64,000 bases of DNA. Source: Asterias rubens (taxonomy: Eukaryota). Of the stretch, positions 39,356 through 64,000 are shown in pieces (the stretch's first letter is position 1; each line of letters opens with the position of its first letter). The DNA is taken from contig NC_047063.1 in the NCBI RefSeq assembly GCF_902459465.1, positions 744,001 to 808,000 of the forward strand, given 5' to 3'. A program made the translations under genes and the position numbers. The notes under the pieces were generated by a model. It had not been told where the DNA came from, ran no database searches, and saw nothing but the letters and a program-made list of their open reading frames with translations.

Positions 39356-40516
39356 ATGGATGCCCAGAGGAGCCACGTAACCATCTTGTTGGCTGTATGT
39401 TTGATCCTGCTGGGATTATTAAGTTGTGTTGTATCAGCTGAATGGCAAGGAGATCTGTCATCTTATCACATTGCTTCATTCAGTAATCCTCATCCTCCTA
39501 GACCTCTCAATGATCCATCTGGTAACCACAATGCTAAATTCAATCATTTCACTCTATCTGGCCCTGATGGAGCTGCGTATGTTGGAGCTGTCAACTACTT
39601 ATACAGACTGGATAGTTCGTTGAATCTGCTACAGAATGTTAGTACATGTCAAGAACTAGGAGAGGGTAGATGTGATATATTCACCAACTACAATAAAATC
39701 CTGATATTAGATAATCAGAATCGGTTGATTACATGTGGAAGTGAGAATGAAGGAAAGTGTCAGTTCAGGAATCCAGATGATTTAACTGATGTGTTGTTTC
39801 AACCAGTGCCTAATGTTGCTGGTTTTGGAGAGTTGTCTACTGTGAGTTTGATTGCACCAGGAACTGATGGACCAATGGGAGATGGTCCAGTTGGAGGAGA
39901 CTGGTTGTATGTAGCTGTGACTTACTCCGATGAGGTTTGGTGTATCCCACCAGTCAGCAGAAGAATCCTTAGTACAGACGGATTGTTAATATCCCCAGCA
40001 CCATACCCAGGATCGTCTTCATCTGTTGCATTGGGGTTTTCTTATAATCGCAATCCATTCCCAATAACGTATGTAACTGGTTTCTCATATGATGGATTCA
40101 CATACTTCATCACTAATCAAATGGAGGATTTTGGTTCCAATGTCTTTGTTTCTAAAATAAACAGAGTCTGTCAGACCAGTCCAACATTTGACTCTTACAC
40201 AGAAATCACCCTACAATGCCAAGGATCAGATGGTAGTGTGTACAGTTTGGTACAAGCTGCTCATATTGGCCCAGCAGGTCAGGATCTTGCTGTATCATTA
40301 GGTTTGAATGCTGAAGACATGGTGTTGTATGCTGTGTTTGCTAAGAATGAAGGAGCTGATGGGACTAGTGATGTACCTATTGATCAGTCAGCATTGTGTG
40401 TGTATAAGATGAGTGATATATTAGATGCCTTCAAGGAAGCAGTCAGGGGATGTATTCAAGATGGAGATGACTACTCAGTGCAGTACTTGGAAGGATCCAT
40501 CTGTCCATCATTACCA
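39356..40516 (+). CDS. Variable exon V3 (signal peptide + Sema), intact
   Basis: ATG at 39356, 387 open codons, phase-0 donor gtgagt at 40517. Confidence 0.9.
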
Positions 40517-42705: not shown

Positions 42706-43850
42706 ATGGAGGCCCAGAGGAGCCACGTAACCATCTTGTTGGCTGAATGTTTGATTCTGCTGGGATTATTAAGTAGTGTTGTATCAGCTGAATGGCAAGG
42801 AGATCTGTCATCTTATCACATTGCTTCATTCAGTAATCCTCATCCTCCTAGACCTCTCAATGATCCATCTGGTAACCACAATGCTAAATTCAATCATTTC
42901 ACTCTATCTGGCCCTGATGGGGCTGTGTATGTTGGAGCTGTCAACTACTTATACTAATTGGATAGTTCATTGAATCTGCTACAGAATGTTAGTACATGTC
43001 AAGAACTTGGAGAGGATAGATGTTATATATTCACCAACTACTTATATAGATATTAGATAATCAGAATCGGTTGATTACATGTGGAAGTGAGAATGGAGGA
43101 AAGTGTCAGTTCAGGAATCCAGATGATTTGACTGATGTGTTGTTTCAACCAGGGCCTAATGTTGCTGGTTTTGGAGAGTTGTCTACTGTGAGTTTGATTG
43201 CACCAGGAACTGATGGACCAATGGGAGATGGTCCAGATGGAGGAGACTGGTTGTATGTAGCTGTGACTTATTCTGCTGAGGTTGGGTATAGAGCAATCCC
43301 ACCAATATCAAGGCGAATTCTTAGTGAAGGATCTTTATTGGCAGCACTTGATGGTAACACATTTTCATCAGTTGTTCCCTTTTCTACACCGATACAAATA
43401 TCGTATAGATCTGCTTTTTCGTTTGGCGGCTTCACATACTTCATCACTTCTCAAAAGGAGGATTTTGGTTCAAATTTCTTTGTTTCTAAAATGAACAGAG
43501 TATGCCAGACTAGTGAATATTTGGATTCTTACACAGAAATCACCCTACAATGCCAAGGATCAGATGGTAGTGTGTACAGTTTGGTACAAGCTGCTCATAT
43601 TGGCCCAGCAGGTCAGGATCTTGCTGTATCATTAGGTTTGAATGCTGAGGACATGGTGTTGTATGCTGTGCTTGCTAAGAATGAAGGAGCTGATGGGACT
43701 AGTGATGTACCTATTGATCAGTCAGCATTGTGTGTGTATAAGATGAGTGATATTTTAGATGCATTCAAGGAAGCAGTCAGGGGATGTATTCAAGATGGAG
43801 ATGACTACTCAGTGCAGTACTTGCAAGGATCCATCTGTCCAGCATTACCA
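42706..43850 (+). pseudogene. Variable exon V4, disabled
   Basis: Premature TAA at 42955-42957 (tac taa where other copies have tac aga). A net -4 nt change near 43041 (ttatata replaces aataaaatcct) shifts the frame. The rest is open to donor gtgagt at 43851. Confidence 0.88.
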
Positions 43851-44212
43851 GTGAGTATAACGATCCTGTAACTACCCCCTTACACTTCATGTTTTCAAAT
43901 TGTGTGCACGTTTATGATAAGGGACATGATACCATCAGGGTAATGTTTTCAATTTGAAATCATAACGTTGGATGCAATATATCTTAAAGTAATGCTTTAA
44001 CATGTCTACATTTATCGTCAGTCCAGAAAGAGGCATTTAAGAATATTATGTTCAAGCAAAAATAATCAGTTCAAAATTAAGTATTGACATTATACATTTT
44101 GCCTGTAAAGCAACAACAAACTGTTCAATGTACTGTTCTTAAGTATCTTTAATAACCTTCTTTTGGAAGAAGATCATGCAAGCACACAAGAAGTATACCG
44201 CCCTCCCGTGTA

Positions 44213-45298
44213 TGTACGTACCGGTTACAAACCTATGTTCCGACACCCCTATGTTCCGACACGCCTATGTTCCGACACCCCTATGTTCCGACACCCCTAT
44301 GTTCTGACAACTCGGCCTATATTCCGACACCCCTATGTTCCGACACCCCTATATTCCGACATCCCTATATTCCGACACCCCTATGTTCCGACAACTGAAC
44401 TTATGTTCCGACACTCCTATGTTCCGACACCCCTAAATTCCGACACCCCTATGTTCAGACACCCCTATGTTCCGACACCCCTATGTTCCGACACCCCTAT
44501 GCTCCGACAAGTTATTTTCGCACATTATTACTCTGTTGATCAATAACAAAAACACATCTTGTAATACAGGTTCCCTGGCGAATTTTGCCCGGAATAGGTT
44601 TGAACATCATAAATTGAATTTTTACTGATTTTAAAAGTGATGGAGTCAAATTAAGATAATCGAATCACACATGATTCGGTTGCTTGTTGTGGTTATAAAC
44701 ATGAGTTAGGTCTATAGCTCCCCGAGTTAGCTGGCAATGAAATAATGGGTACTTTGCTATTGTTAGATGCGTGTCCGTGTTTTTAACATTTCATGAGCCT
44801 TCAATTTATTGCGCCGATGTGTACTTTCTTACATTTGCGCCCAACAACAACAAAAATAAATAAAAATAAACAAATAATAATAATAAAGTAAAAATAATAA
44901 TATTAATAATAATAACACATTAAGTCATACCACCCCCTCCATTACTCAGTCCTCTTCAAAATAAATCAAAGATGCTATTTTTTAATAGCAGAGTAACACT
45001 TCTCATATAAATTAGACTCCTCTGGGGGACTACATAGGTTACCGGTACATTTATGGACTAAATTGCAGTCGGGTGTAGTTTCTTAAAAAATGGCTCACAC
45101 AAAACGTTGTTGCAGGTTGTCGGAACATAGGGGTGTGTGAACATAGGGGTGTTTGGGTCGTTGGAATATAAGGGTGTCGGAACATAGGGGTGTCGGAATA
45201 TAGGTTGAGTTGTCGGAACATAGGAGGAACATAGGGGTGTCAGAAAATAGGGGTGTCGGAACATAGGGATGTCGGAATATAGAGCAGTCACCTACGTA
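44213..45298. mobile_element. Foldback-like insertion with inverted subterminal arrays of a 16-bp unit (CCTATGTTCCGACACC)
   Basis: Direct tandem array at about 44232-44510 and a reverse-complement array at about 45117-45281, with tacgta at both ends. It is absent from the homologous spacer positions after V1 (about 34710) and V3 (about 40887). Confidence 0.7.
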
Positions 45299-46377
45299 AC
45301 ATAAGTTGATTATCGCTAACAAAACTTAACGTAAAAGTTTCTCTATAGCCTTCAAAGCATTAATGCATTTATGCATATTGCTCTGTTTGTAGAAAGAACT
45401 ATTTGAAGCACATATCCATTTTTTTTTTTTTTTTAATAATTATTTAGTATACTTTGAAATGTAGAGACAATCATTTTTGGACGAACTGGCACTGTCGCCC
45501 TTGCCCGCCACACATGCGTCCATGTGAGACATGGACGCTACCTTTTGTACATCCCCGACAGGGATATTTGTAGGAACTCCATGTCCCATCTGACATTAAG
45601 CGTGAGAGTAAGTTTACATTTAGAGAGTAAAGAAAACAAAATGGCGCTCAACAGTGCACCTCAACTATCATTGTTAGGTTTACGTTGAATTATTTTTATT
45701 GATAAATAAACCACGACAATGCACCGTGGTTTTACATGAAACTTCGCAATTTCCTACAAGGAAGTATTTTTTTAAACATGGAAAGATTGAGGCAAAGTGG
45801 TGTCTATTGGAATATCGACAGGGAACAAAGAGTTCAAAAACTGTTCCATTTTTATGACAGGGGTGTTGTAGATCAAAAAGTGGGTACTAATTTTGCAGTG
45901 GTATATATAGTATTGAAAACGTATCAAAAGTTAAAACCATTTAAACGTTTCATGTTCTACGTTAACAATCAGTAATTGAGGAAGTACACAATATGATTTA
46001 CCGTGTCCCATAAGAGACACTTAATGCCCAATAAAGAACTTCCAGAAAAGTTCCAGTGTGCGGCGTGTTGTGCGTTTTTGATAATTTATTATTCAGTTTT
46101 GTAATGCACATAAACAGTATATGCTTGAACGCATGTTACAACAACGAACTTGAACAATAATTGCTCGGGTCGTCAACCTTTTCTGTCATTCTGGTACAAC
46201 ATACAACCTGATCGCAGACGAAAGACAAGTTGCAGGCCGCTCACAAACGGAAGGTGAAGGTTTTAAAGGTAAGAATTCCGTTTTGAAGCCTGAGCTGAGA
46301 GAGCTCATTATGACTCTAGTGATAATAAATTAGAAATCAATATAATTCTGGGGAAATACAAGTGAATCTTGTGTTAA

Positions 46378-46764
46378 AGGCAAAGGACCCTATTGGTAAT
46401 TACTCAAAATAATCATAAACCTTTCTTGATTACGAGTAATGGGGAGAAGTTGATAGTATAAAACATTGTGACAAACAGCTCCCTCTGAAGTGACGTAGTT
46501 TTCGAGAAAGAAGTAATTTTCCACGAATTTGATTTCGAGACCTCAGATTTATAGAACTTGAGGTATCGAAATCAAGCATCTGAAAGCCCACAACTTCGTG
46601 TGTGTGTGACAGGGGTGTTTTTTTCTTTCAGTAATATCTCGCAACTTCGACGACCGATTGAGCTCAAATTTCCCTCTGCTGGTCACTCAAAGTCCCTCGG
46701 GGGAATAGACGTACACTAGTTACCTCATTGCCAGTCAGTATGTGTTTAATAGTGTACAGTGTCT
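46378..46764 (+). mobile_element. Kolobok-like MITE upstream of V5 (same insertion site as the V2 copy)
   Basis: Same flanks and the same unusual 3' segment as 36157-36545, so it was duplicated with the spacer. Confidence 0.85.
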
Positions 46765-47097
46765 TTAAAGGCAATAGATCGGGCTTTAAAGTAATATGTA
46801 ACCCTCCTTACAAATATAATAACTATGGGGAAAGAAACTCGACTTTATCCTAAATAAGGCAAGACGAATAAGCAGCTTTTTAGTTTTAGTTTCTGGCGTT
46901 TTCTTGTGTGTTTTGGGGCAATGTAATAACTTATATTACACCGTTGTGTGTTTTTTCAGAAACTTGCGAGATATATCATGAGACAAAGCTGATGGCTGGT
47001 GTTACTGCATTCACCCATGTTTGTACACTGTGATTGAGTCTTCAGTCGTTAAAGTTTGTATCTCTGGCAGAAAGACACAAAGCGTACATTTAGTACT

Positions 47098-48150
47098 ATG
47101 GAAGCCCAGAGGAGCCACGTAACCATCTTGTTGGCCGTATGTTTGATCCTGCTGGGATTATTTAGAGGTGTTGTATCAGCTGAATGGCAAGGAGATCTGT
47201 CATCTTATCACATTGCGTCATTCAGTAATCCTCATCCTCCTAGACCTCTCAATGATCCATCTGGTAACCACAATGCTAAATTTAATCATTTCACTCTATC
47301 TGGCCCTGATGGGGCTGTGTATGTTGGAACTGTCAACTACTTATACAGACTGGATAGTTCATTGAATCTGCTACAGAATGTTAGTACATGTCAAGAACTA
47401 GGACAGGATAGATGTGATACATTCACCAACTACAATAAAATCCTGATATTAGATAATCAGAATCGGTTGATTACATGTAGAAGTGAGAATGTAGGAAAGT
47501 GTCAGTTCAGAAATCCAGATGATTTGACTGATGTGTTGTTTCGGCCAGGTGAAGGGACAAGCGGAACAGAACAGAACGTTGCTGGTTTTGGAGAGTTGTC
47601 TACTGTGAGTTTGATTGCACCAGGAACTGATGGATCAACTGGACCAGGGCCAGATGGAGGCGACTGGTTGTATGTAGCTGTGACTTACTCCAATGAGGTT
47701 GGGTATCGACATATCCCACCAGTCAGCAGAAGAGTCCTTAGTGCAGACGCATCGTTGATATCCCCATCAGGCACAGGGTATTCTCCATTTACTGCGTTTG
47801 ATATTTCTTATAAACAAAACGCAGTCCCATTTAACTATGTATCTGGTTTCTCATATGATGGATTCACATACTTCATCACTTCTCAGAAGGAGGATTCTGG
47901 TTCCAATGTCTTTGTTTCTAAAATGAACAGAGTCTGTCAGACCAGTCCAACATTTGCCTCTTACACAGAAATCACCCTTCAATGCCAAGGATCAGGTAGT
48001 GTGTACAGCTTGGTACAAGCTGCTCATATTGGCCCAGCAGGTCAGGATCTTGCTGTATCATTAGGTTTGAATGCTGAGGACATGGTGTTGTAATATGCTG
48101 TGTTTGCTAAGAATGAAGGAGCTGATGGGACTAGTGATGTACCTATTGAT
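47098..48150 (+). pseudogene. Variable exon V5, in-frame stop, 3' end lost by fusion to V6
   Basis: ATG at 47098. A 3-nt insertion gives ttg TAA tat gct (48091-48093) versus ttg tat gct in the other copies. After ..DVPID (48150) the sequence jumps to the RLDSSL position of another V copy. Confidence 0.85.
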
Positions 48151-49071
48151 AGACTGGATAGTTCATTAATCCTGATACAGAATGTAAGTACATGTCAAGA
48201 ACTAGGAGAGGATAGATGTGATATATTCACCAACTACAATAAAATCCTGATATTAGATAATCAGAATCGGTTGATTACATGTGGAAGTGAGAATGAAGGA
48301 AAGTGTCAGTTCAGGAATCCAGATGATTTGACTGATGTGTTGTTTCAACCAGGGTCTAATGTTGCTGGTTTTGGAGAGATGTCTACTGTATGTTTGATTG
48401 CACCAGGAACTGATGGACCAATGGGAGATGGTCCAGATGGAGGAGATTGGTTGTATGTAGCTGTGACTTATGCTACTGAAGAGGTTGGGTATACAGAAAT
48501 CCCGCCGGTCAGCAGAAGAATCCTTAGTACAGATGGGTTGTTGATATCTCCATCGGGCACAGGGTATTCTTCATCTACTGTATTTGATGTTTCCTATACT
48601 CGTGATCCATTCCAAATAACGTATGTCGTCGGTTTCTCATATGATGGATTCACATACTTCATCACATTTCAAAAAGAGGATATTGGTTCCAATGTCTTTG
48701 TTTCTAAAATGAACAGAGTCTGTCAGACCAGTCCAACATTTGACTGTCACACAGAAATCACCCTACAATGCCAAGGATCAGATGGTAGTGTGTACAGTTT
48801 GGTACAAGCTGCTCATATTGGCCCAGCAGGTCAGGATCTTGCTGTATCATTAGGTTTGAATGCTGAGGACATGGTGTTATATGCTGTGTTTGCTAAGAAT
48901 GAAGGAGCTGATGGGACTAGTGATGTACCTATTGATCAGTCAGCATTGTGTGTGTATAAGATGAGTGATATTTTAGATGCCTTCAAGGAAGCAGTCAGGG
49001 GATGTATTCAAGATGGAGATGACTACTCAGTGCAGTACTTGCAAGGATCCTTCTGTCCATCCTTCCTGATG
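48151..49071 (+). pseudogene. Variable exon V6, 5'-truncated V2-like copy fused to V5
   Basis: Lacks its own ATG and signal peptide. Variable islands are almost identical to V2 (YATEEVGYTEIPP..STDGLLISPSGTGYSSST.FDVSYTRDPFQITYVVGF). Donor gtgagt at 49072, and the downstream flank matches the V2 flank. Confidence 0.85.
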
Positions 49072-50269
49072 GTGAGTTTCGTTTGCTGGTTAAGTTTAAA
49101 CCGACATACATGTATGCAATGCAATGTGTATGTTTATGACCATTAATAATAATATAGATGCCATCAGGGATGATAATTTTTTCAACTTGAAAACCGATAC
49201 TTTAAGTCATGTTTAAATTTTGTTGTCAGTGATAAACATTGATTTTTGGTACAGGTATTTAGCTGTCGTAAAGACAAGCATTACAGTCCTTTGATTGAAT
49301 AATAGACTATGATTGTCTAATGAACGGACACGGTCGCCCTCATACCCTCCACACGCACGTGCACAAAGATCATGGGGTTTGCAAATTGCGTGACCCCTTA
49401 GATTAGTCATGAAGTCAAGACGGTAATTGTTAAGCGCGGTGTGTAGTTACAGCGGTGTAGCTACGGGGACGATACACACACCCTCGATCCCAGTATGTGT
49501 GTGTGAGCCATAGAGCTATATAATAGCTCTATGGTGTGAGCAGAGCTGCCTCGCGCTACCTACGACTGTTGCATGTGTAACATCGCACTGTGACCGTTGC
49601 ATGAAAGGCAGACAAATAGGCAGCGCCTAACGACTTGTCATCAAGTCTACCCCTGGATATGCAATGTGCCAAAATGTAGTTGTCAAAAGTTTGTTCAAAT
49701 AAAATATATAATTATTGTTGTTGCAATAAAAACGAACATTACGCCTGCTCTCATGCCTGACCTTTGCTTCCAGTTGGGTGAACAACATTGGGCCTACCTG
49801 TCATTGTGTGCATAGACTGTTTCTATTCCTTTCGTTAGTTTGTCTTTAAGGCCTACTAAGCATGGTACGCTATTTCCGTCTCGTATCTTTGTCTCGACTG
49901 CCGAGTATTCTGGCTCTCTTTCGTTGAAGTTTTTAGGCCGCCATCATCAACAAAGTGTTGTTTACGGTAACTGCATGAAGCCCGCCCATCACGAATTCTG
50001 ATTATGACTCAAATAACTCTGGAATCGCGGAAACAACACTATCCCACCAAAAGCCAGTTTAATCACTTTAGTTTCTGGCAGACATTTCGTGAATGTTGTG
50101 CTTTTATTTGTGCTTGTTTTGTATAATTTAAAGTTAACAAAGCTACTGCAAAGGAGTTCTGAAAAAGTTTGAGAGATCTTTCTCCAGCCTTGCGTTAGTC
50201 ACCATGTGCCTGAAACTTTGTACATAGCTTTGGAAGAAACAGAAGAGAACAAGTAACTTATGTTACACT

Positions 50270-51576
50270 ATGGATGCCCAGAGGAGCCACGTAACCATCT
50301 TGTTGGCTGTACGTTTGATTCTGCTGGGATTATTAAGTAGTGATGTATCAGCTGAATGGCAAGGAGATCTGTCATCTTATCACATTGCTTCATTCAGTAA
50401 TCCTCATCCTCCTAGACCTCTCAATGATCCATCTGGTAACCACAATGCTAAATTCAATCATTTCACTCTATCTGGCCCTGATGGAGCTGTGTATGTTGGA
50501 GCTGTCAACTACTTATACAGACTGGATAGTTCATTGAATCTGCTACAGAATGTTAGTACATGTCAAGAACTAGGAGAGGAATGTGATATATTCACCAACT
50601 ATAATAAAATCCTGATATTAGATAATCAGAATCGGTTGATTACATGTGGAAGTGAGAACGAAGGAAAGTGTCAGTTCAGGAATCTAGATGATTTGACTGG
50701 TGTGTTGTTTCAACCAGGGCCTAATGTTGCTGGTTTTGGAGAGTCGTCTGTGGGTTTGATTGCACCAGGAACTGATGGACCAGTCGGACCAGGGGCCGAT
50801 TTCACAAAGATCTAAGATTGATCGTTACTGCAAATCAATCGTAGTTGCTAAGTAAAATGTGATGTCACAATACAAATCACTATGGTGATACTGACAATTT
50901 GTCTTGCGATGAATTTGATTGCTTTGTGAAATCGGCCCCAGGGCCAGATGGAGGAGATTGGTTGTATGTAGCTGTGACTTACTCCAATGAGGTTGGGTAT
51001 CAAGCAATCCCACCAGTCAGCAGAAGAATCCTTAGTAAAGAAAGGTTGTTGATATCACCATCAGGCCTGGGGGTTTCTTCATTTATTGCATTTGATGTTT
51101 CCAATCTTAAGACTCCAATCCACATTACATATGTATCTGGTTTCTCATTTGATGGTTTCACATACTTCATCACTTCTCAAGAGGAGGATTTTGGTTCCAA
51201 TATCTTTGTTTCTAAAATGAACAGAGTCTGTCAGACCAGTCCATCCTTTGACTCTTACACAGAAATCACCCTACAATGCCAAGGATCAGATGGTAGTGTG
51301 TACAGTTTGGTACAAGCTGCTCATATTGGCCCAGCAGGTCAGGATCTTGCTGTATCATTAGGTTTGAATGCTGAGGACATGGTGTTATATGCTGTGTTTG
51401 CTAAGAATGAAGGAGCTGATGGGACTAGTGATGTACCTATTGATCAGTCAGCATTGTGTGTGTATAAGATGAGTGATGTTTTAGATGCCTTCAAGGAAGC
51501 AGTCAGGGGATGTATTCAAGAAGGAGATGGTCACTCAGTGCACTACTTGGAAGGGTCATTCTGTAGTAGATTTCCA
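50270..51576 (+). pseudogene. Variable exon V7 (closest to the constant region), disrupted by a MITE
   Basis: ATG at 50270. A 146-bp insertion plus 3-bp duplication at 50793-50941 introduces TAA (50813-50815) and a frameshift. The downstream half is open to donor gtaagt at 51577. Confidence 0.88.
50793..50938. mobile_element. PIF/Harbinger-like MITE inside V7
   Basis: TIRs gggccgatttcacaaag / ctttgtgaaatcggccc; 3-bp TSD CAG. Removing it restores ggaccagggccagat as in the other V copies. Confidence 0.88.
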
Positions 51577-52140: not shown

Positions 52141-52249
52141 ATTGGTCCAGATATGTTTTTGTGTCATGTTTTTGAAGGGGACACTATAATATACAGGAAT
52201 GCTAAAGGCATCAGTGTAACAGCATCCAATGCTGTACTGGAACTATCAG
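52141..52249 (+). CDS. Alternative constant exon A (109 nt)
   Basis: tctag acceptor; IGPDMFLCHVFEGDTIIYRNAKGISVTASNAVLELS+G; donor gtacat; phase 0 to phase 1. Confidence 0.8.
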
Positions 52250-55200
52250 GTACATCAAATGAGACATCAAATTTTCTGTTCTTCTATTTCTAGGTCAGTC
52301 CAGATATGTTTCTGTGTCATCATTTTGAAAATAGTAACCCAGTATACAAGTATGCTAAAGGAATTGATGTAACTTCATCAAATGCTGTACTGGAACTTTC
52401 AGGTATTAATAAGATACTGCATTACCTAAACAATCAAAATGTTCTGGTTTCAATTTAAAAGGGCAGTTAAACATCGACTCTCATCGCAATCAAATTTTTA
52501 ACAGTCTTAAACGCTTGTTTTATTTTGACTGCTCACTTTCCTCTGTGCAATTGTATTTGATAGTTAGTCTTCTTGATACAAATTATCAGTAAGTAAATTT
52601 TAAAAATATTTAAAGGCAGTGGACACTATTGGTAATTACCCAAACAAATTATTAGCATAAACCTTACTTGGTAACGAGAGGCTGAGAGTATAAAACATTG
52701 CTATAAACGGCTCCCTCTGAAGTAACGTAGTTTTCGAGAAAGAAGTAATTTTCCATGAATTTGATTTCAAGACCTCAGAATTAGATTTTGAGGTCTCGAA
52801 ATCAAGCATCTGAAAGCACACAACTTCATGTGACAAGGGTGGTATTTTTCTCTCATAGTTATCTCGCAACTCAATTGAGTTCAAACTATCACAGGTCCGT
52901 TGTTTTATGCATATGTGAGAAGACTGTTCTTTGACAATTACCCTTAGTGTCAAGTGTCTTTAAAGTGTTGTCCCCTGTGTGTTTGCAAGTTAAATGTTTT
53001 TTTGATAGTTTTAACTTGTTCTCTTTTTTACAGGACCATAAAGCTGTTGAGCTGATATTAAGTATCCTTTAAAAATATGGTTTTTTTTTTAATAAATTAA
53101 TGTACATTGTTTTAATATTGTCATTTCAAGACACTCTGATGTCCTCCATCATTACAACTACTGAGATGACCCACACTGTAGCTATCATTGGAACTTACTA
53201 CAGTGGGGAACTTTTAAAGGTAAGTATATTAATTTTGTTAATGTATATTTCTTTCATTTGTTTCTTGCATCAATAAGAGGATGCTTCCATCTTGGCGTTT
53301 GTGCAATTGGCAGCTTCCAGACCAAATCAAATAAACAAAACTGAAATTGTTATCATCCATCACCTTTAGAAGTAATTCATTATTCTTTCCTTGGAAAATG
53401 TGGGTAGGAACTACTAGGCGGGTAAATACATTTAACGCAATTCCAAGTATACATAGAAAGTTAACACAAACAAATAAAAACTTGGGTGGGTTTAAAATAT
53501 GAAACTTTAAAACACTGCTAATTATTGACTGTTGTGGGTCTCAAGACCGGTCTCCCCCTCGGACCTTCAGGTCTTGGTCTCGGATTTCGACTACAACACT
53601 GAACGTCTAACCACTCCTTATTTACAAGTGTTTGACCATAAATTATTATTGAAAATCAACCCGCTTACAACCACAAACTTTACCGTAAAAGAATATATTT
53701 TAAAAATTTACACACAAACATGCACACGCAGCAATGTTTCCGCCTTCTGGAAACAGTGATATGGAGCAAAAGGAAGGGACAGAAAACAGACAGAAGATGA
53801 AAACATTGAACAAAGGAAAGTGATTTCAAAAGGACAAAGGAAGGGTGGGGTATAAGGACTTTGCAAGTGTCAAACACAAACTTTACAATGATGACCTGTA
53901 ACTTTGGTATAACAAATGACAGCACAAATCTATGATTCAAGATTAAACATTATCCCAGGTTAACTATTCATATTATGCAAGATGGACCCATTGTATGCCT
54001 ATCTTTAAATTGTTGTGTTACAGGTTCACATCCAGAGCAAGACCTCAGCCAGACTGTATGAAAGAGTAGACCTTGATATTACTGGATCAGTTCTTAAAGA
54101 TGTCAAGATTAATGATACAACAAGAGAGATGTACATACTCACTGAACAAAAGGTACAATATATAAAGATGCAAGGACCATGCAAATGTTATTTTTTAATT
54201 TACCCCAAGCATATAATTTGACTTCATCTTTTTAAATATGTTTTGATTTGGACTGTATAGTTTCTGAAGATGCGGTTTGAGAATTGTGGTCAGTATACAA
54301 CGTGTGAGACGTGTATTGGTACGGATGCAGAGATGGATGGAGACCCATACTGTGGCTGGTGTACTCTGCAAAGACAGTAAGTATTGTATCTTGATTGGTT
54401 AACAATGCATGTTGAGAGTTATTACATATGCAGGGAGGGATGGAAACGTCAGCTGAATTAACAAATTTGGATCACCTCAAAAATAACTCTGTATGTATAT
54501 TATTAATACCTGTTTAGATGTACCCTGTATTCTGACTGCAAGATGCCTGATGTGTCTACGCGATGGTTAGCCTACAATACTGCACAGTGTATTGAGATAA
54601 CCAATGTGGATCCTTATAACAATCTACCAATCACTGTCACAGAACAACAGGTAAGAGTAACTGCTTACTGACTTTTGCATTTCCATACAGCTGGTTGGCA
54701 CAAACAATTGCTAAACACAGGTTCTGAGTATTGCTTAGCACAAATGGACGTTCCTCCAAGATGCTATTAAGATTACATAATTGTGACTTGATGGCTTGCT
54801 GTACTGAATGTCTCCTTCAGCCTCCCCTCTTTCTCTCAAATCCACCTGTATACCAATTGTATATTTACTAGGTTACTGTGAGTGTAGAGCAGTTACCAGA
54901 CTTACTGACCAACATGACATATGAGTGTTGGTTTGGATCCTACGTATCTCAAGCTACAAAGACTAATGAGGATCTTAGATGTGTCTCCCCACCTGATAAT
55001 AGAATACCACCAATTCAACAAGGAGGTAAGTCAAACGCTAAACTAGGGCCATTTGTTGCTATTGTTGTTAAAATGAAATAAACATACAACTTTTTATGAA
55101 TGTTCCATTTTCCAGATGATGCTGTTCAGGTTACACTGAGCATCCATTCCAGTGAAACACCAGTCAGTTTTGTGGATACAAGTTTCTACTTCTATGAATG

Positions 55201-58200
55201 CTCCACTCATACTTCGTAAGAATATTTTATGTTCGCTCTTGCTTTAACTTTGATACTTCAGAAGAATATTTTCTGTTTGCTCCAGCTTTTCATATGACAC
55301 TCCAATTATGGTACGCAAAATGTCTTCATTGACTTTGGTAATGATAAAGTTTATTGAGTTCCAAATTACTGAGTTTCAAATTCTGTGATGTGGTTAAAAT
55401 TGTTGATACTTTGTCCATTAGCATAGTACACTTCTCTAACCCATAATCCCAATCATCAGCTTTGTTGTTTTGTATTTGTGTTTGTTGTAGTTGTGTATCT
55501 TGTGTTGATAGTCGATGGGCCTGTGATTGGTGTGTCTTTGAGAATAGATGCACTCATGTTAGTTCTACTTGCTCAGGAGACAACGAAATCATCATTACAG
55601 GACAAAACGTAAGATCAAACTCTATCACAAATGTAGTCTTTTCCAAATACTGATATCTAACAGTTAAACAAACTGAAGATCAAGGTGTTGTCTACAAAGA
55701 CATGAAACCATACATGAAATATGTTTTCAATAACATGTATGAGGTGTTATTGAGTTGTTCTGAAACATTTGAAGATCAATGAAAAAATGTATGTTAGTCA
55801 ATGATTTGATATTTTTTCTTTAGAATCCAGCTTTGTCTTCACCCAAGGGTCCGGGTTCCTGCCCTCAGCTGCTGGCTCAGAATACTAAAGTCCTTCTTCC
55901 CAATGGAATTGAAAGAAGTTTACAAGTCATGACTACAAATCTACCTGATCAGACCCAGGTTAGTTAGTATCTTTATTGATCAAACAGCGTTCAAAGGCAA
56001 AATGAGTTAAATTTCCGAGGCAAAAAGTGATTTTACAGCCAACACCAAGCAGAAGGATTGCAATTTTTGGTCTACTTTATGGCAATGAAACAAACTCTTT
56101 AATATACCCTGTCCTTACTCTATGAATATAAATTTAACTGTGTTAATGTATAAAGTCTTCAATGTATGAAAAAGAAAGCAAACAAACATAAGTTATGCTT
56201 ATAGAATACAGGAAGTGACTGTTGAAAATTACTATAATTAATAGTGCTCCACTTTGAAATAACAAAGCAATTAATTACTATTCCACATGATAGTTTGGTA
56301 ACAAAGAGGAGATAGTTTTCTGTGCATTTTGTAAGTGCTACATCATGAAGTATCCCATTTATTGTGTGAATTACACCAACAACAAAAAAACACTTCAGAA
56401 ATAACAGCAATCACAGCCTAAGATTACAAAAACCCAGACATTGGAGAGAAGGAACTAAGAGATAGAAAAACAAAATGAAGTAACTTCATAGGAAAAACTA
56501 AAACAAAAGGCCCAGAATGAGTAAGTACTGAAATAAATTGTCAACATCTCGTGTTGCTGAGCACTTTGAAAGGAGCGGCAGTTTTAGCATAGCATAGGTA
56601 TAGTACAAATGCTGGTCTGAGACAAAGAAAGGATACAGAGAAGAAAAACAAAATTACAAAATAAAAAGGCCCTCATAAAAAAAACCATTTGAAAAGTGTT
56701 GTATCAATAGCTTCATGTTGTTTTTATCAAATCTTTTAAAACTCCCCAGAACAAAATACCTAACTACCTGTCACATTGTCTCTCTATCTGAAATTACAGG
56801 GGTCTGGCATTAAAGACAAATTATGGTGTAAAAGTATTTATACTAAGCTACCTGTTCAAACAGAATTGATTTGACTTCTGTGAAAATAAAAACAGCACAA
56901 ACCTTCTTAGAATGAACGCCTTGTAACTAACATTTGTCTCTTCATCTCTTAGACTTCTAGCTTTGAATGTAGCTTTGATATCGAGGGAATACGTCAGACT
57001 ACAACGGCACAGCGAAATGATGATACCATCATGTGTGACATGAAAGCTGTAAGTTTTCTCAAGCCATTTCGCAGAATTATTTGAAATTGGAAAGCCAAAG
57101 TATCATTATTGAATCAGACGCCAAGAGTTGAGTTGAACTTTGTTTGATATCAACCCATTTGTACTCCACAGTATACCTACACTTCCACTGATGAAGCAGA
57201 GCTGATTGTGAAACTGACCATTGAATGGACAGACACCAGTAATAACCCTCACATTCTAGATGACTTATTCAGCAATAAAGGTGAGTTTGAGTCAAGGATG
57301 TGGGGTGGGGATACAGGCACTTCCATACACAAAAGAGTCTAACTTATAGAATTTTACCCTAAGTAAGCTGTGGTCAAGTGGTTAGACTGCAGGACTTGCA
57401 ATCACAAGGTTGTGGGTTCGATTCCCCCAGTTAACCGCTGATTTCACAATGACTAGAATAAATATTGTCGTCTAGTTAATGAATCAAAATTTCTTGATTT
57501 GTGTAATTCATAATCATAGACGTTAAACCAATGTTTGTGAGAGAGAAATTGGCTGTTGCCAGCTTGGTGTTTATATCCCTTGTGGGAGTTGGCCAAGTTC
57601 CCTTGATGGGAAGATCATTCAAACAAACAAACAAACAAAGACCCTAGCATACAGTAGCTAGGATCCCATAAGGGGTATGTTGCTGACTGAGTTCTCTCTG
57701 GACTGTAATGGTTTTGTTTAGTACAAAAAAAATTGGGCCATCTAGCATTACAATATAAAAAACCTAACAATCGTAAGATAAGTTGATTTTGATCATGAGA
57801 TGCCTTCCAACCCAACCTGTTCCCTCCAGCATTCTAATCGGAGACAAAGGTAACCTTTCTAAAGCATCTTTCTTTTAATGGTTTATAAATAAGACATGCA
57901 AAGAAAGATTTTAAACTTGTACTTTTTGCTACAGCAACACTTTACAAGTGTGGAGTATTGAAGCCAGATTGTAGTCGGTGTGTTACTGCCAGGCCAGAGC
58001 TGGAGTGTGTTTGGTGTAATGCTTTGTGTGAACTAAGAGAGTCTTGTACAACAGCGGAAGGAGAGTGGGTTACCCACAATAATAACGCCAACTGCCCTGA
58101 TCCAATCCTCCAAGGGGTGAGTAGATATAATATAAGCTTCTGATTACAACTATGGAGTAACTGGCGATGTCAACTGACATGACCCTATCATCCAAGAAGC

Positions 58201-61200
58201 AAGTAGATACCAAGTACATTGATTTTGACAACTAGGTGAGGGTCTGTACTATTTTGTTAACGACACTGCGAGACTAGTTAAAGAAGGAAACACCTGCAAT
58301 GAATGTGGAGGAATGTGACCCATACCCGAAACATTTTTCTGTAACTGTAAGTGACTTGTTGACTTGATTTTGTTTTGATTGTTTAGGTGTATCCATTGAG
58401 TGGACCAATAGAAGGTAACACCATAGTATCTGTAATGGGTACAGATATTGGCACAGGGTTCCATACTGTACTGAATGTGATGATTGGAGACCAACAGTGC
58501 CATCTGGATGGACTGGAAGCCTATTATGAAATAGGCACCAGGTAAGAAGTTTTACAAAACCATCTTAGATGGACTAGAGGCTTACTTTGTACTCGGTTGG
58601 AGGTAAGTGTTTGATCACACTGTTGAACGCTGAGTTTGTGTAATCTTTTGTTTGTTTGTTTATTTGTTTATAGAGGTGTAGGTGTTTGTTTGTTTGTTTG
58701 TTTGTTTGTTTGTTTGTTTGTTTGTTTTTTAGAGAGGGGTGTCTTCACAGCCACAGCTTAGCCATTTTATTTTACCATTGTGATCACTTTGTTCTTAAAA
58801 AGTTAATATATTTATTATTGTGGATTAGCGGGATTTGAAACCTCACATTGTCCTTTTTGTTCGACTCCAGCTGCACCAGCATTGTAAACAAAATAATTAT
58901 GGTATAACAAATGAAAGATATTTCTAACAAGACGTTTTATAGATTCTTCAGTTATGTAAAAAAGAAATATAATCTTACCTTATTCCACAGTGTAAGTTGC
59001 CTAACTCAATCAAGAGTTGAAAGTGTTGTGCCGGTATCTCTTACAGTCAGGGGAGGTGATGGGACAACACTACAGGAAAGCAAAGGAAATGTCAACTTTC
59101 AATATAGGGTAAGTTTGATTACAACTCTGATGGGGTCTGAGTGTCTGTAAAACTTGGAACTGTTGAAAATAAATCAACATTAAGTTTTGAAATAAAAGTC
59201 CATTCAACATGGGATCTATTTTCTATTTTCTAGTCCTAGATTGCATTTCAATCAATCGCTCAAGATTATTTGAAAACAAGATACAAAAAATAAGTGTTTC
59301 TTTTCCAATGAGATCAATATAACAATTGCTTGTTGACAATTAGCAGGACACATGGTCTGCTCGATGTTTAGTGTCTACTTTATTTGTTTTTTGTGATTCT
59401 GATTTTCCTGCCAGGTTCCATCTATTACAAGTTTCAGTCCTCGTTTTGGACCAGCAGCTGGTGGGACTCGTTTAACAATCAACGGAATGGCTCTAAATAC
59501 AGGACGGAATATTCAGGCATTCATTGGTGATAAAGCTTGCAATATAAAAAGGCAAGTAAAGACAAAACAATTAAGTCATAGAGGTTGAGCCTGTTCGTCA
59601 GAGATTTGTTTTGATTAGTCTTTTAAATTGAGGTCTGATCAGAATCACACCATTAGTCAGTTGGTTAAGAAAAGTCTTTTATAGTGATGTGTCATTGGTT
59701 GTATATTTTTGATTTACTTCACAGCCCAGTGACAGAGACTGAAGCAGTGTGCACAAGCTCTGAGGGGTCTGTTGGGCAGACAGAAGTTCTCAAGATGTCT
59801 TTTGATGGATCAGATAAAACAAGCGAGGTGTACACTTTCAGCGACAACCCGGTCATTACTGAAGTCAGTCCAACCACCAGTATATATTCGTGAGTACATC
59901 TACAAACAATAGTTGTTAAAGACAGAGGACACTATTGGTAATTGTCAAAGACTAGTCTTCTCACTTGGTGTATCTCAACATATACAAACAAAATCAGACC
60001 TGTGAAAATTTGAGCTCAATTGGTCGTCGAAGTTGCGAGATAACAATGAAAGAAAAAACACCCTTGTCACACGAAGTTGTGTGCGTTTAGATGGTTGATT
60101 TTGAGACCTCAAATTCTAAACTTGAGGTCTCAAAATCAAATTCGTGGAAATTTACTTCTTTCTCGAAAAACAACGCCACTTCAGAGGGAGACGTTTCTCA
60201 CAATGTTTTATACTATCAACCTCTCCCCATTACTTGTTACCAAGTGAGGTTTTATGGTGATAATTATTTTGAGTAATTACCAATAGTGTCCTATGCCTTT
60301 AATGACACTATATTTTTCTGTTGAAATTTTTCAATTGACCACAATCTTCAATTTGTGTCTTATAAGGCTGCAGTTTCACAAGTAAGTTGAAGCTAAATGG
60401 GTCAACAAATTGGAAATCTCATTGAAAGCAATGAAAAATTTAAATGTAAAAATAACCTCATTATTTCCTAATCAGATTAGTTTAGCTACTTTTATCCTGC
60501 AGTTGTTTACCCTTTGATTTTATTGTCAATACTCAGTGGCGGTCGGGAGATGGTTGTCAGAGGGACTCATCTAGACACTGCCCAGATGGCTTCACTTGTT
60601 GTTACAGTTGCTTCTCAAATCTATAAAAGATCTATTGGCAGTGAGGGACTCAACATTAATGAGTTTGTGGAGGTGAGTCAACATAAAAATTATACTATAA
60701 CATTTTCCCATCTTACATCTCGACAATTTCAAAGATTAAATGTTAATCACAACAGGACTTTTAACAAATAGTTGTTTTACAAATTTTGTTTTTCAAGAGT
60801 TGTGCTGTGGAAGGCTCAGAGTTCATGCGCTGTACAACTCCCAATATAACATCAGCCGTAAGCAGATCTCAATCCAAACATACTGTGACATTTGGCTTCA
60901 TTATGGACGGTGTGAGTGACCTCTTAACGTGGTCAGAAGACAACGATGTTGACTTGGAGTTCTTTCCTGATCCAGAGTATGATGAGTTTGAAAACAATTT
61001 ATATGACAAGATGGACAATTTGTTGAAAATCAAGGTAAAGTAATGCTCACGGATTCTAAAACTGGAAAGTATAGTTTCCTTATACCTAGTGGTTTAAGAT
61101 CTACAAAATAACTTTAAACTGCGTTGCTGTCATATTGTTAAGGGTTTCATATTTGTTTATTTTCTTCAAAATTTGTACAACGTGTTTATGATTTGAGTTT

Positions 61201-64000
61201 ACAGCTAAAAGAGTTGTGTGTTTTTTCCAACAAAGACTGGTTCAACCAGCCATTTCAATTATCAGTGCAAGGATTTCTTCGGTTTTCTTTTTTTTTGTCA
61301 TGTAAATGAATCCCTTGCCATTTTTATTGTTGTCTTGAAAAAATAGTGTTCTATCTTCATTTATTGGTATACTGTTTATTTAAAGGGTAAGTTTATCAAC
61401 AAGGCAATCACTGAATCAGAAATCATCATTTATGTTGGACCAGTGAGAAGTGACGTAACCTTCATTGAAGAAACAGCCCTTGGTTGTATTTTACCCAAGG
61501 AGCAACCACCTGCAGGGGACTTCACCGGCCAAGACAAAGAGAGAGGTCTTCCTGTGGTCTGGGTAAGTCTTAAGAGAAACCTCTGTTGCCATAAAGAAAC
61601 AACCATCTGAACTACAATTCATGAGCCAAGACAAAGAGAGAGCGCTCCAGAAGAAACCTCTCTGTTGCTATTTATTCATGAAACAACCATCTGCCTAGAA
61701 CTTCAAGGGTCAAAACAAATGCAGAGGACTCCTCGTAGTCTGGGTAAGTCTTAAAAAAAATCTCAGTTGTGATCTACCAAATAAGAAACAACCATCTGAC
61801 AATGAGTTATTGCATTAAGACACATAGACAGGGCTTTCTTAAGTCTGGGCAAGTCGTAACACAAATCTTAGTTTTAAGTTAACACATTGTAGAATGAAAG
61901 AACCATTACAGAGTGCTTTCTGCATCTTGTAAGACAAAACTCACTTGGAACTCACTTGAGAAATAACCTCCTTATAAGAAGACTTTATGAAGTAAGATAA
62001 AGGGGTGAGATGACTCAAATCTCAGTTGTACTTATTCTGTGCAATTCTTAACATATTTTAATCTCCTTTTCAGGTGGTTCACAGCAACCTTGAGTTCCGC
62101 ATTGGTTACATCAAATATAGTTCAGCCATTTCAACTATTACTATTCTAGCGGTTATCGGAGCAGTGACTTTCATCATCTTGGTCTGCATAGTTATAGTCC
62201 TGACGATTAGGCTGAAGAGAGCCAGGCGAGATGCTGATCTTCTGGTCTTAAAGAAAGACCTTCTTGAAGATGTTAAGAAAGGTCAGAATTAAAGTTCACA
62301 GAATTTACTTTATTGATTATATGACCAGGGGACAATTTTTTAGTTGAAGCTGATAGTGATATATGCAGACAATTTGTGCTAAGCTAGGTTTCTCTGCTAA
62401 AAAGCACAAAGAAGTAGTAAATCAGTGACAAACATCGGCCCAAAAGCTGTTAAGCAGTTTTCTCTGCTAAGCAAAAAGAGCAATAAAAAAAAAAGATTGG
62501 GGCACCAGTTGCCACAACAACTTTATGAGATGTTGGCTGGCTACCTGTTTCTACTGAGCAAGTTTTATGTTCTAAGTAAGTTACAGTTCCAAAGCGGCTG
62601 TGCCTCACAGGGCAAATGAAGCTTTTAATAAAGATAATCAGTTTATCACATCCACATTGAACAGGATCATACTTTAATAACAATTTGAAAAACAGGACTC
62701 TCCCAGAGAAAATTTGACATTCTCCGATTGACAAGTGACGTTGAAGAGAGTGGGATGCCATTTGTGAGTCACCGTGACTATGCTACTAACATGCTGTTCA
62801 TTGGACAAGAGGTTCGACCAACCACAACAGATCAAGAGGTAACATTGATCAACACAAGAGACTGCAAGATCCTCTGAATCAGAGACCTGTCATTAAGTCC
62901 GATGAAGTAGGATCTTGAGTAATAATTTAATAATCTATGAACTTATTATTGCGCTCTCTCCAGGACCAGCCTGTTCGAGAGCGCATAACAATTTAACACA
63001 ATACCAGTAAAAAAAATTTAAATTATGAAAATTAATCCATACGAAAACAATCAAATGCGAAATTGCATAAAAAATCCATTAAAAAGTTACAGTTATCCAT
63101 TAAAAAAGTTACAGCAAATAACAAAAATCCATATCTCAAGTCTATACTCCCAAGGGTCAGGTGCAGGGCCTAATTTCATAGAGCTACTCTAGGCAGAAAG
63201 TTCTCTTGTAAGCAGAGAACACTGCTTACAAAATCCCCGCTTAGCAAGAATGAGCAGGAAAGCAGTCACAAATTGTATGCGATAATAGTATTTTGGCTGG
63301 TAACTTTATTCTGGTAAGCATAATTTAGTTTTGCTCAGCTTATTTTTGTGCTAAAGCAGCTCTATAAAAATGGGCCCTGTTTCTAGAGTCCTTAATAAAA
63401 GTGAATCTGACGTCAGGTTGCCAGACCACTTGACTTATTTATAAACTCTTTCTCAGGAACCACAGTTGACAACAAACCATCACATGCTAAATATAACTTT
63501 TGCTGCAAATCTTTATCCTGACCAGTAATTCTACTCATGACTTAGTCCTTTGAATTCCTGTTTTGAAAATCTTCAAAAGTGGTGACACCAAACACCAAGG
63601 GCCAATTTCACAAAAAGCTTTGTGTGTGAGAATCTTATTAATTACTCAGCACAGTGTAATGATGCAATTCAATTCACACCTAGATGTACTCTAGTGTTTT
63701 GTGAAATTGAACGCAAGGACTCAACAAAAGGAACAACACCAAATCCAAAGTATTTACTATATAACCCCTTCCAAAGAAACAGTAAAGTTAGAGCAAAATG
63801 CAAACAGCAAACAAACCTCACCAAATAAAGGAAATACAGAAATTTATCAGAGTGATCAACATTGTTGCACCTTTAACTGTTGAATTTAAAATTTGATGCT
63901 TAGGAACCATATTGCAGTTTGTCTAAAAATCATTCATTTTTCATTCTGTGCATAGTACGGTGAACATGCTATGGTTGAAGAAGCCATGATGATGTTCTCT
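52141..64000 (+). CDS. Plexin-family receptor, constant region (Sema C-terminus, PSI-TIG-PSI-TIG-PSI, 4 IPT, TM, start of plexin-type cytoplasmic region); runs off the window
   Basis: Exon chain read by hand, all phases consistent: 52141-52249 (A) or 52294-52402 (B), 53131-53219, 54024-54152, 54261-54376 (PSI: CGQYTTCETC..DPYCGWC), 54518-54650, 54872-55025, 55116-55215, 55491-55608 (PSI: CVSCVDSRWACDWC), 55824-55958, 56953-57048, 57172-57280, 57935-58116 (PSI: CSRCVTARPELECVWC), 58387-58541 (IPT: VYPLSGPIEGNT), 58991-59108, 59415-59551 (IPT: FSPRFGPAAGGTRLTING), 59725-59889, 60537-60672, 60798-61034, 61386-61562, 62074-62281 (TM: ITILAVIGAVTFIILVCIVIVLTI then RLKRARR), 62696-62838 (DILRLTSDVEESGMPFVSHRDYATNMLF, like plexin DINELTSDLD..GIPFLDYRTYAMRVLF), and 63956 to window end (YGEHAMVEEAMMMFS). 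Total to 62838 is 2946 nt = 982 codons with no stop. Subfamily cannot be assigned by eye. Confidence 0.92.
52294..52402 (+). CDS. Alternative constant exon B (109 nt), paralog of exon A
   Basis: tttctag acceptor; VSPDMFLCHHFENSNPVYKYAKGIDVTSSNAVLELS+G; donor gtatta; same length and phase as A; only 44 nt downstream of A. Confidence 0.8.
52614..52959 (+). mobile_element. Kolobok-like MITE in a constant-region intron
   Basis: ttaa|aggcagtggacac..agtgtct|ttaa. Confidence 0.8.
57361..57480 (+). mobile_element. tRNA-derived SINE-like head
   Basis: tggtcaagtggttag (A box) and gggttcgattccc (B box) with no convincing acceptor stem; intronic. Confidence 0.5.
58683..58726. repeat. (GTTT)n microsatellite
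   Basis: Direct reading. Confidence 0.95.
59920..60298 (-). mobile_element. Kolobok-like MITE, reverse orientation
   Basis: TTAA flanks; internal sequence is the reverse complement of the 36157 family. Confidence 0.8.
63166..63377. mobile_element. GGGCC-terminal MITE (Harbinger-like)
   Basis: Imperfect TIRs gggcctaatttcatagagct / agctctataaaaatgggccc; similar termini near 16088-16333 and 23618-23875. TSD not confirmed. Confidence 0.55.

What the first reader, a model, noticed from the sequence alone, without database searches (positions are those of the whole stretch)
52141..52402. Second diversity layer: duplicated 109-nt exons A/B separated by a 44-nt intron (mutually exclusive signature)
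Seen: two paralogous exons of identical length and phase, both open with intact splice sites, 44 nt apart. Including both or neither would shift the frame of 53131 onward. They differ mainly in the segment after the conserved Cys (HVFEGDTIIYRN vs HHFENSNPVYKY), which directly continues the last hypervariable island of V. Established: a very short intron between alternatives (steric block) plus frame incompatibility are classic mechanisms of mutually exclusive splicing. Inference: V x A/B combinatorial assembly of one surface loop.
Basis: partly seen in the sequence, partly recalled or inferred. Interest (0 to 1): 0.75.

Follow-up and report, generated by a model that had tools for sequence, protein, structure and literature searches.

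The report
Swappable exon pair in starfish plexin
A starfish plexin receptor gene carries two alternative copies of one 109-base exon only 44 bases apart, so each mRNA can keep just one of them, which gives the receptor two versions of a surface loop that Sema domains use for binding partners; it is a clean new example of a known splicing trick, not a new kind of mechanism.

Summary
Exon A (52141-52249) and exon B (52294-52402) are both 109 nt, in the same phase, with AG/GT sites and 44 nt between them. They are 75% identical. Including both or neither gives a stop codon.

The gene is an Asterias rubens plexin with about seven alternative first (V) exons.

- **Sister species:** the A. amurensis orthologue keeps the same pair and the same 44-nt spacer. 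Its RefSeq isoforms X1 and X2 differ only in this exon, and X3 joins another V exon to B.
- **Paralogues:** two neighbouring genes have the same pair with 36- and 40-nt spacers, and models of one of them use either member.
- **Intron sizes:** 111 other introns of these genes are at least 88 nt.
- **Selection:** framework codons of A and B are under purifying selection (dN 0.10, dS 0.55). The loop codons are not (dN 0.63).
- **Decayed copy:** in the window's inverted paralogue, a 939-bp transposon split a former 35-nt spacer, and the second exon has decayed.
- **Protein position:** the exon encodes the end of the blade-5 "extrusion" loop and the next strand.

I obtained no junction reads in A. 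rubens, so exclusivity there is inferred. It is a new member of a known kind (mutually exclusive exons kept apart by a too-short intron).

The parts
52141..52249 (+). Exon A: 109 nt, phase 0 in and phase 1 out. It encodes IGPDMFLCHVFEGDTIIYRNAKGISVTASNAVLELS.
   Evidence: It is 95% identical to A. amurensis L001:8914-9022, which RefSeq isoform X2 uses. Its acceptor is strong (94th percentile) and its donor CAG|GTACAT is weak (4th percentile).
52250..52293 (+). 44-nt spacer intron between A and B (GT...AG). It holds the pyrimidine tract of B's acceptor and presumably B's branch point.
   Evidence: It has the same length and 43/44 identical bases in A. amurensis. It is half the length of the shortest of 111 other introns, which is 88 nt.
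52294..52402 (+). Exon B: 109 nt, same phase as A. It encodes VSPDMFLCHHFENSNPVYKYAKGIDVTSSNAVLELS.
   Evidence: It is 92% identical to L001:9067-9175, which RefSeq isoforms X1 and X3 use. Its acceptor is at the 59th percentile and its donor CAG|GTATTA is the weakest of all scored.
53131..53219 (+). Next constant exon (89 nt). It completes the split codon left by A or by B.
33183..51576 (+). Array of about seven alternative first (V) exons, each encoding a signal peptide and most of the Sema domain. V1 is 33183-34349, V2 36900-38072, V3 39356-40516, V4 42706-43850, V5 47098-~48150 (runs into V6), V6 48151-49071, V7 50270-51576 (reading frame broken). All have phase-0 GT donors.
54024..62838 (+). 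Downstream constant exons of the same plexin gene (19 further exons inside the window). The reading frame is open with either A or B.
9909..10017 (-). Exon A' of the inverted paralogue (A. rubens XP_033647296.1). It is 109 nt and is the only copy used in that model.
   Evidence: 100% match to P0192.
8963..9901 (.). 939-bp element with terminal inverted repeats (17 nt, 94% complementary), flanked by a TATTAG duplication (9907-9902 and 8962-8957). It sits inside what was a 35-nt spacer between A' and the second exon copy.
8820..8928 (-). Decayed second exon copy (psi-B) of the paralogue. The acceptor and the first ~17 codons (VSPDGYLCHSVADGSNL) are still recognisable. After that come indels, and the donor is lost (CAT|GTTC).
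8451..8539 (-). Constant exon C' of the paralogue.

Best explanation
A and B are a tandem-duplicated pair of mutually exclusive exons in a starfish plexin gene. Each mature mRNA carries one V exon, then A or B, then the constant exons. Exclusivity is enforced in two ways. (1) The 44-nt spacer is too short to be spliced out. The branch point for B's acceptor must lie within about 25 nt of A's donor, so the spliceosome parts that recognise A's donor and B's branch point cannot both bind. Choosing A's donor blocks B, and choosing B's acceptor leaves A inside the V-to-B intron. (2) Any mRNA with both or neither is frameshifted into an early stop and would be degraded. The weak donors of both exons leave the choice open to regulation. 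The swap replaces about 12 residues at the end of the blade-5 extrusion loop of the Sema domain, directly after the variable end of the V exon. V choice and A/B choice together therefore set one loop region. Shown here: the anatomy, the frame logic, conservation in the sister species and in paralogues, the selection pattern, and predicted isoforms of the sister species. Inferred: the steric mechanism, actual use of both exons in A. rubens, and any effect on ligand binding.
For: Anatomy and frames.

Orthologue: A. amurensis has the same two exons and a 44-nt spacer. RefSeq isoforms X1 and X2 (2039 aa each) differ only at residues 390-421, and X3 joins another V exon to B.

Paralogues: L002 and L007 carry pairs with 36- and 40-nt spacers. 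L002 models use the first or the second member.

Intron sizes: exact gene models give 111 other introns, minimum 88 nt and median 432. In the human survey, a donor-to-branch-point distance under 50 nt is the criterion for steric interference (PMC5740500; PMC6071210).

Protein: every related protein has this 36-37-residue segment exactly once.

Selection: for A versus B, framework codons give dS 0.55 and dN 0.10, and loop codons give dN 0.63 and dS 0.53.

Decay control: the paralogue's second copy, separated from the first by a transposon insertion, has indels and a lost donor.

Splice sites: acceptors are strong and donors weak.

Structure: both isoforms model to the same fold, with residues 370-409 as loop and 409/410-424/425 as strand. 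The model matches solved plexin Sema domains at TM 0.75-0.80.
Against: No junction read was obtained in A. rubens. Two A. rubens RNA runs had zero depth over 52002-52502. The contigs laid on the next exon carried paralogue-type letters at 53170 and 53196. Only run X16, from a related organism, showed depth over the pair, and mostly over B.

The RefSeq isoforms are computational models whose transcript support I could not inspect. No full-length A. rubens protein for this gene turned up.

A. rubens and A. amurensis are only about 3% diverged, so conservation between them is weak evidence by itself. The exon tree is unresolved, so a single origin of the pair is parsimonious but not shown.

I did not measure the smallest intron this species can splice beyond these genes.
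Confidence: 0.75

Rival explanations
1. Only one of the two exons is used in A. rubens. The other is an unused relic that has not yet decayed, and the sister-species isoform models are over-predictions.
For: There was no RNA coverage of A or B in the A. rubens runs laid. In X16 the depth lies mostly over B. The paralogue shows that one copy can be lost.
Against: A and B differ at dS about 0.55, yet both keep frame, length, AG/GT sites and a conserved framework (dN 0.10). Six exons in three A. amurensis genes do the same. The one copy known to be unused has clearly decayed.
Confidence: 0.1
2. The exons are mutually exclusive, but the choice is enforced mainly by something other than the short spacer, such as competing RNA structures or splicing factors plus nonsense-mediated decay. 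The 44 nt would then be only a leftover of the tandem duplication.
For: Frame incompatibility alone would remove double inclusion. Many human mutually exclusive clusters rely on it (PMC5740500). The weak donors suggest factor-dependent regulation.
Against: The spacer stays at 35-44 nt in four independent copies, while other introns in these genes range from 88 to 2053 nt. The local RNA fold is no better than shuffled sequence (z = -0.01). The one copy whose spacer was enlarged lost its second exon.
Confidence: 0.1
3. A+B co-inclusion or double skipping is common and acts as an unproductive-splicing switch that lowers expression, rather than as a way to make two proteins.
For: Both outcomes give early stops.
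Against: A 44-nt intron is half the smallest intron seen in these genes. The protein-level selection pattern on both exons argues that both are translated.
Confidence: 0.04

Closest known systems
Mutually exclusive exon pairs kept apart by steric hindrance (classic case alpha-tropomyosin exons 2/3, cited from my own knowledge; human survey PMC5740500; mechanism summary PMC6071210)
   Same: Two adjacent homologous exons of equal length and phase. The donor of the first lies too close to the branch point of the second (the whole spacer is 44 nt, against a criterion of under 50 nt). The exon length is not divisible by three, so double inclusion is out of frame.
   Different: Here the entire intron is tiny, not just the branch point placed far upstream. 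The pair sits in a plexin Sema domain and directly follows an array of alternative first exons. Splicing was not measured.
Arthropod Dscam1 variable exon clusters
   Same: Tandem duplicated exons chosen one at a time diversify the binding surface of a cell-surface receptor. More than one variable position combines in one mRNA.
   Different: Dscam clusters hold many exons and rely on competing RNA structures (docking and selector sites). Here there are only two exons, no notable RNA structure, and the other variable position is a choice of first exon, not a second internal cluster.
Clustered protocadherin / UGT1A type loci (variable first exons spliced to constant exons)
   Same: The upstream V array in this gene has that layout: each V exon has its own start codon and signal peptide and a donor into shared exons.
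   Different: As far as I know, those loci have no mutually exclusive internal exon immediately after the variable exon. The A/B pair adds a second, splicing-based layer.
Expanded plexin-B / Met-LP family of sea stars (Acanthaster planci; PMC6374515)
   Same: This is the same protein family. The closest relatives outside Asterias are the Acanthaster plexin-B-like and Patiria Met-like proteins, and the same exon is present in them.
   Different: The Acanthaster and Patiria genes I fetched have this exon once only. The paper does not mention alternative exons.

Membership tests
Mutually exclusive exon cluster from tandem exon duplication | Neighbouring exons with sequence homology | tested here: met
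   82/109 nt and 24/36 aa identical; tblastn E=4e-14.
Mutually exclusive exon cluster from tandem exon duplication | Same (or similar) length and same reading phase, with intact splice sites | tested here: met
   Both exons are 109 nt, phase 0 in and phase 1 out, with AG...GT on each.
Mutually exclusive exon cluster from tandem exon duplication | The protein needs the encoded segment exactly once | tested here: met
   All homologous plexins and Met-like proteins carry one copy. Both or neither gives a stop codon.
Mutually exclusive exon cluster from tandem exon duplication | Transcripts contain one or the other, never both | tested here: inconclusive
   A. amurensis RefSeq isoforms X1, X2 and X3 fit this, but they are predicted models. 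No junctions could be read in A. rubens. The junction pattern was absent from metagenome contigs.
Steric-hindrance type of mutual exclusion | Distance from the upstream exon's donor to the downstream exon's branch point is too short (under ~50 nt) | tested here: met
   The whole spacer is 44 nt (36, 40 and a former 35 nt in paralogues). The shortest of 111 other introns is 88 nt. The criterion comes from PMC5740500.
Steric-hindrance type of mutual exclusion | Lengthening the spacer allows the two exons to be spliced together | not testable with these tools
   This needs a minigene or genome edit. The transposon-split paralogue is only suggestive.
Plexin | Sema domain, PSI and IPT/TIG repeats, and a cytoplasmic plexin GAP domain | tested here: met
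   Pfam Sema hits the V exons. The orthologue P0176/P0186 carries Sema, PSI, TIG, Plexin_cytopl and Plexin_RBD. Its Sema-PSI part matches Drosophila PlexA at E=6e-61 by sequence and TM 0.75-0.80 by fold. The window ends before the cytoplasmic exons.

The most novel reading that the evidence does not exclude
Asterias plexins of this cluster form a combinatorially diversified receptor system, in which the choice of V exon times the A/B choice yields up to about a dozen ectodomains per gene across several genes. The variable extrusion loop would be tuned for recognition specificity, such as cell-cell or self/non-self recognition by coelomocytes, in the manner of Dscam or clustered protocadherins. 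The nonsynonymous excess in the loop codons between sister species would then reflect diversifying selection.
Probability: 0.15. Interest if true: 0.8.

Novelty: new member of a known kind. Interest (0 to 1): 0.55.

Why it matters
Plexins are usually seen as a small, conserved family of guidance receptors. Here a lineage-specific plexin cluster has two stacked ways of varying its ligand-facing Sema domain: a choice of first exon and a two-way exon swap in the extrusion loop. Sema domains generally use that loop for partner contacts (PMC3405059). The pair is also a very clean natural case of the "intron too short" rule. It has four independent copies with 35-44-nt spacers, plus one copy in which a transposon enlarged the spacer and the second exon died. 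That makes it a good system for testing the rule outside the few vertebrate and insect examples. The A. rubens gene models at this locus should also carry both isoforms.

Tried and rejected
- **Read laying.** X15 behaves like DNA. The joint and loose-end tables were filled by a very abundant repeat at 52600-52950. A narrower stretch that avoided the repeat would have been better.
- **Run searches.** Only two runs hold any sampled words of the pair.
- **Short spliced protein fragments.** A third protein search for fragments spanning V/A/C or V/B/C found only two read-through fragments from genomic contigs.
- **Junction pattern.** The exact pattern (A or B joined to the next exon) had no match in metagenome contigs.
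- **Exon tree.** The tree of 13 exon copies was a star, so it cannot date or order the duplications.
- **RNA structure.** A local fold as a possible selector of the exons was no better than shuffled sequence.
- **Apparent gene decay.** I suspected the A. rubens gene might be decaying, from apparent stops in tblastn and a one-base shift. This was an artefact of matches running across short introns. The rebuilt 21-exon reading frame has no stop.
- **Ligand interface.** I did not find residue-level plexin interface data in the papers I could read, so I make no claim that A/B residues touch a semaphorin.

Full report
**What is at the coordinates.** The window is animal DNA (36-40% G+C).

- At 52141-52249 and 52294-52402 lie two 109-nt open segments. 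Each is preceded by a pyrimidine tract and AG and followed by GT. Between them is a 44-nt GT...AG spacer.
- The two segments share 82 of 109 bases and 24 of 36 codons.
- Nine of the 12 amino-acid differences fall in residues 10-20, just after a conserved Cys.
- Joined to an upstream V exon and to the next exon (53131-53219, 89 nt), A alone or B alone keeps the frame. A+B runs into a TGA inside B. Skipping both runs into a TGA in the next exon.
- With either exon the frame stays open through 21 downstream exons (2955 nt).

**What gene this is.** Upstream, seven repeats of about 1.1-1.2 kb (33183-51576) each encode a start codon, a signal peptide and most of a Sema domain. Each ends at a phase-0 GT donor.

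The first-exon protein finds plexins. The nearest are an expanded sea-star family named plexin-B-like, plexin-A4-like or Met-like. That expansion has been described for Acanthaster planci without mention of alternative exons (PMC6374515).

On the minus strand of the window lies an inverted paralogue. Its exons match Asterias rubens XP_033647296.1 at 100%.

**Is the segment needed once?** In every related protein I examined (Asterias, Acanthaster, Patiria and more distant plexins) the segment equivalent to A/B occurs exactly once. It lies between the variable end of the first exon and the conserved ...TLMSSIIT... motif. B's YKYAKGI is the family's usual form. A's YRNAKGI is derived.

**Evidence from the sister species.** The A. 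amurensis orthologue (locus L001) has the same two exons and a spacer of the same 44 nt. Only one spacer base differs.

- RefSeq gives three isoforms of this gene. X1 and X2 are both 2039 aa and differ only at 12 positions within residues 390-421. X2 carries the A-type exon and X1 the B-type. X3 starts from a different V exon and carries B.
- I rebuilt these models exactly from the DNA.
- They are predicted models, and I could not see their transcript support. From my knowledge of NCBI's pipeline, alternative isoforms are normally issued only with transcript evidence.

**The same design in paralogues.** The A. amurensis cluster spans 28.99-29.32 Mb of one chromosome.

| Locus | V exons | Copies of this exon | Spacer |
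|---|---|---|---|
| L001 (orthologue) | at least 3 | pair | 44 nt |
| L002 | several | pair (second exon 112 nt) | 36 nt |
| L007 | several | pair | 40 nt |
| L003, L006, L008 | one each | single | none |
| Acanthaster L004 | two | single | none |
| Patiria L005 | one | single | none |

For L002, the models join one V exon to the first member and another V exon to the second. The pair thus appears to be specific to the Asterias lineage. A 13-exon tree is unresolved and cannot say more.

**A natural experiment inside the window.** In the minus-strand paralogue, exon A' (10017-9909) is followed by GTATTAG. Next comes a 939-bp element with 17-nt terminal inverted repeats (8963-9901). It is flanked by a TATTAG duplication, followed by 28 nt ending in TCTAG, and then a second exon copy starting at 8928.

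- Removing the element and one TATTAG restores a 35-nt spacer much like the 36-nt one of L002.
- The second copy still reads VSPDGYLCHSVADGSNL..., but then has indels and a CAT|GTTC in place of the donor.
- The annotated protein uses A' only.

This shows that the pair predates this paralogue. It also shows what an unused copy looks like, in contrast to the intact A and B. Which came first, the insertion or the loss of use, cannot be told.

**Why the spacer matters.** Exact models of three cluster genes give 111 other introns, with a minimum of 88 nt and a median of 432 nt. RNA contigs confirm 90-nt and roughly 106-108-nt introns just downstream.

The spacers of 35-44 nt are half the smallest of these. 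A donor-to-branch-point distance under 50 nt is the published criterion for steric interference (PMC5740500). "Intron too short" is a recognised mechanism for clusters of exactly two exons (PMC6071210). The branch point for B must lie inside the spacer, within about 25 nt of A's donor. That is an inference, because I did not map a branch point.

Scored against a matrix built from the 111 introns, the A/B acceptors are strong (59th-99th percentile). Their donors are among the weakest (0-5th percentile), which is typical of regulated exons. The local RNA folds no better than shuffled sequence (z = -0.01), so I see no sign of a structure-based selector.

**Selection.** Between A and B, the framework codons (1-8 and 21-36) give dS 0.55 and dN 0.10. 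Codons 9-20 give dN 0.63 and dS 0.53.

- Both copies have therefore been kept as coding sequence for a long time, with the loop free or driven to change.
- Between the two Asterias species, all four changes in A's loop codons alter the protein. So do five of the seven nucleotide changes in B's loop codons, and both changes in B's framework codons. The flanking intron differs by about 3%.
- The counts are too small for a formal test.

**Where it sits in the protein.** AlphaFold models of residues 1-545 of the orthologue were built with A (mean pLDDT 81.6) and with B (77.6). They give the same picture: strand 342-352, helix 353-369, a long loop 370-409 with a short hairpin, then strand 409/410-424/425.

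- The model matches solved plexin Sema-PSI structures at TM 0.75-0.80, and by sequence at E=6e-61 to Drosophila PlexA.
- A helix plus a long disulfide-braced loop inserted after strand C of blade 5 is the "extrusion" that marks Sema domains, plexins included (PMC4308982; PMC3405059).
- The V exon ends at residue 389, and A/B encodes 390-425.
- The RON paper states that the extrusion takes part in partner contacts in semaphorins and plexins. I did not verify contacts for these residues.

**RNA evidence in this species.** This was the weak point.

- Only two runs held any sampled words of the pair.
- In the one read-laying run allowed, the A. rubens RNA runs X1 and X2 had zero depth from 52002 to 52502. 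Their contigs on the next exon carried A at 53170 and G at 53196, which are paralogue letters.
- X15 covers introns evenly and looks like DNA.
- X16, from a related organism, had depth 13 and 38 in the two bins covering the pair and about 1 or less in the bins before it. It carried the gene-specific T at 53196 in about 60% of depth. This fits expression of the orthologue with at least exon B.
- The joint table was filled by a repeat at 52600-52950 and listed no joint at A/B.
- A search of metagenome contigs for the spliced junction found nothing, and a search for short spliced protein fragments found none.

Use of both exons in A. rubens is therefore inferred, not shown.

**Verdict.** The pair is real and old relative to the split of the two Asterias species. 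Both copies are maintained by selection, and the layout allows only one per mRNA. The sister species' annotation uses both. The most likely mechanism is steric exclusion by the 44-nt spacer, backed by frame incompatibility.

This is a new member of a known kind. I found no paper describing mutually exclusive exons in a plexin Sema domain or in echinoderm plexins. What lifts it above routine is the stacking on a variable first-exon array and the transposon-split control copy.

Noticed in passing
window 52600-52950 (copies also at 36225-36332 and 46444-46551): A short repeat in the intron after exon B reaches summed contig depths of 10^5 to 10^7 in all four runs, with many internal joints and loose ends. 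It is a very abundant, probably transcribed, interspersed element, and it swamped the read-laying tables.
   Followed up: no
window 8963-9901: A 939-bp element with 17-nt terminal inverted repeats (TAGGGCAAATGATTTTC / GAAAATCATTGGCCCTA) and a 6-bp TATTAG target duplication. It looks like a non-autonomous DNA transposon. I did not classify its family.
   Followed up: partly
window 60787-60788: The acceptor of a constant exon is TG here, where A. amurensis has AG. An in-frame AG lies 9 nt downstream, so A. rubens may make a protein three residues shorter at this point, or the base may be an allele or an assembly error.
   Followed up: partly
window 53170: The window has C (Thr, giving ...EMTHT...). 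The A. amurensis orthologue, most Asterias paralogues and every RNA or DNA contig laid there have A (Asn), which forms a conserved N-x-T glycosylation motif. It is either a private change of the assembled individual or a loss of a conserved sequon in this gene.
   Followed up: no
window 44195-44541 and 45098-45298: Two arrays of a 16-nt unit (CCTATGTTCCGACAC and its reverse complement) sit in inverted orientation about 600 nt apart, in the spacer between V4 and V5. They look like the ends of a mobile element.
   Followed up: no
window 47098-49071: V5 runs straight into V6 at about 48100-48153. The 3' end of V5 is fused in frame to codon ~84 of V6, which suggests an unequal-crossover junction inside the array.
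   Followed up: no
protein P0197 (ENA assembly ERZ23498367, 577-nt contig; no DNA served): An unidentified contig encodes a truncated copy of the same exon (VDPDNFLCDPF...), followed about 20 codons later by a full copy (VDPDMFLCHPFEKASRVYRYAKGIDVTSSNAVLELS). Another sea-star genome may hold a partial duplication of this exon.
   Followed up: partly
Patiria miniata proteins P0155-P0174: Most of the closest Patiria relatives combine the plexin-type ectodomain with a tyrosine-kinase domain (the Met-LP type of PMC6374515) and exist in about 20 copies on one chromosome. A. rubens 'plexin-A4' was reported as a coelomocyte surface marker (PMC13409769), but the accession was not given in the text, so I could not link it to this locus.
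   Followed up: no
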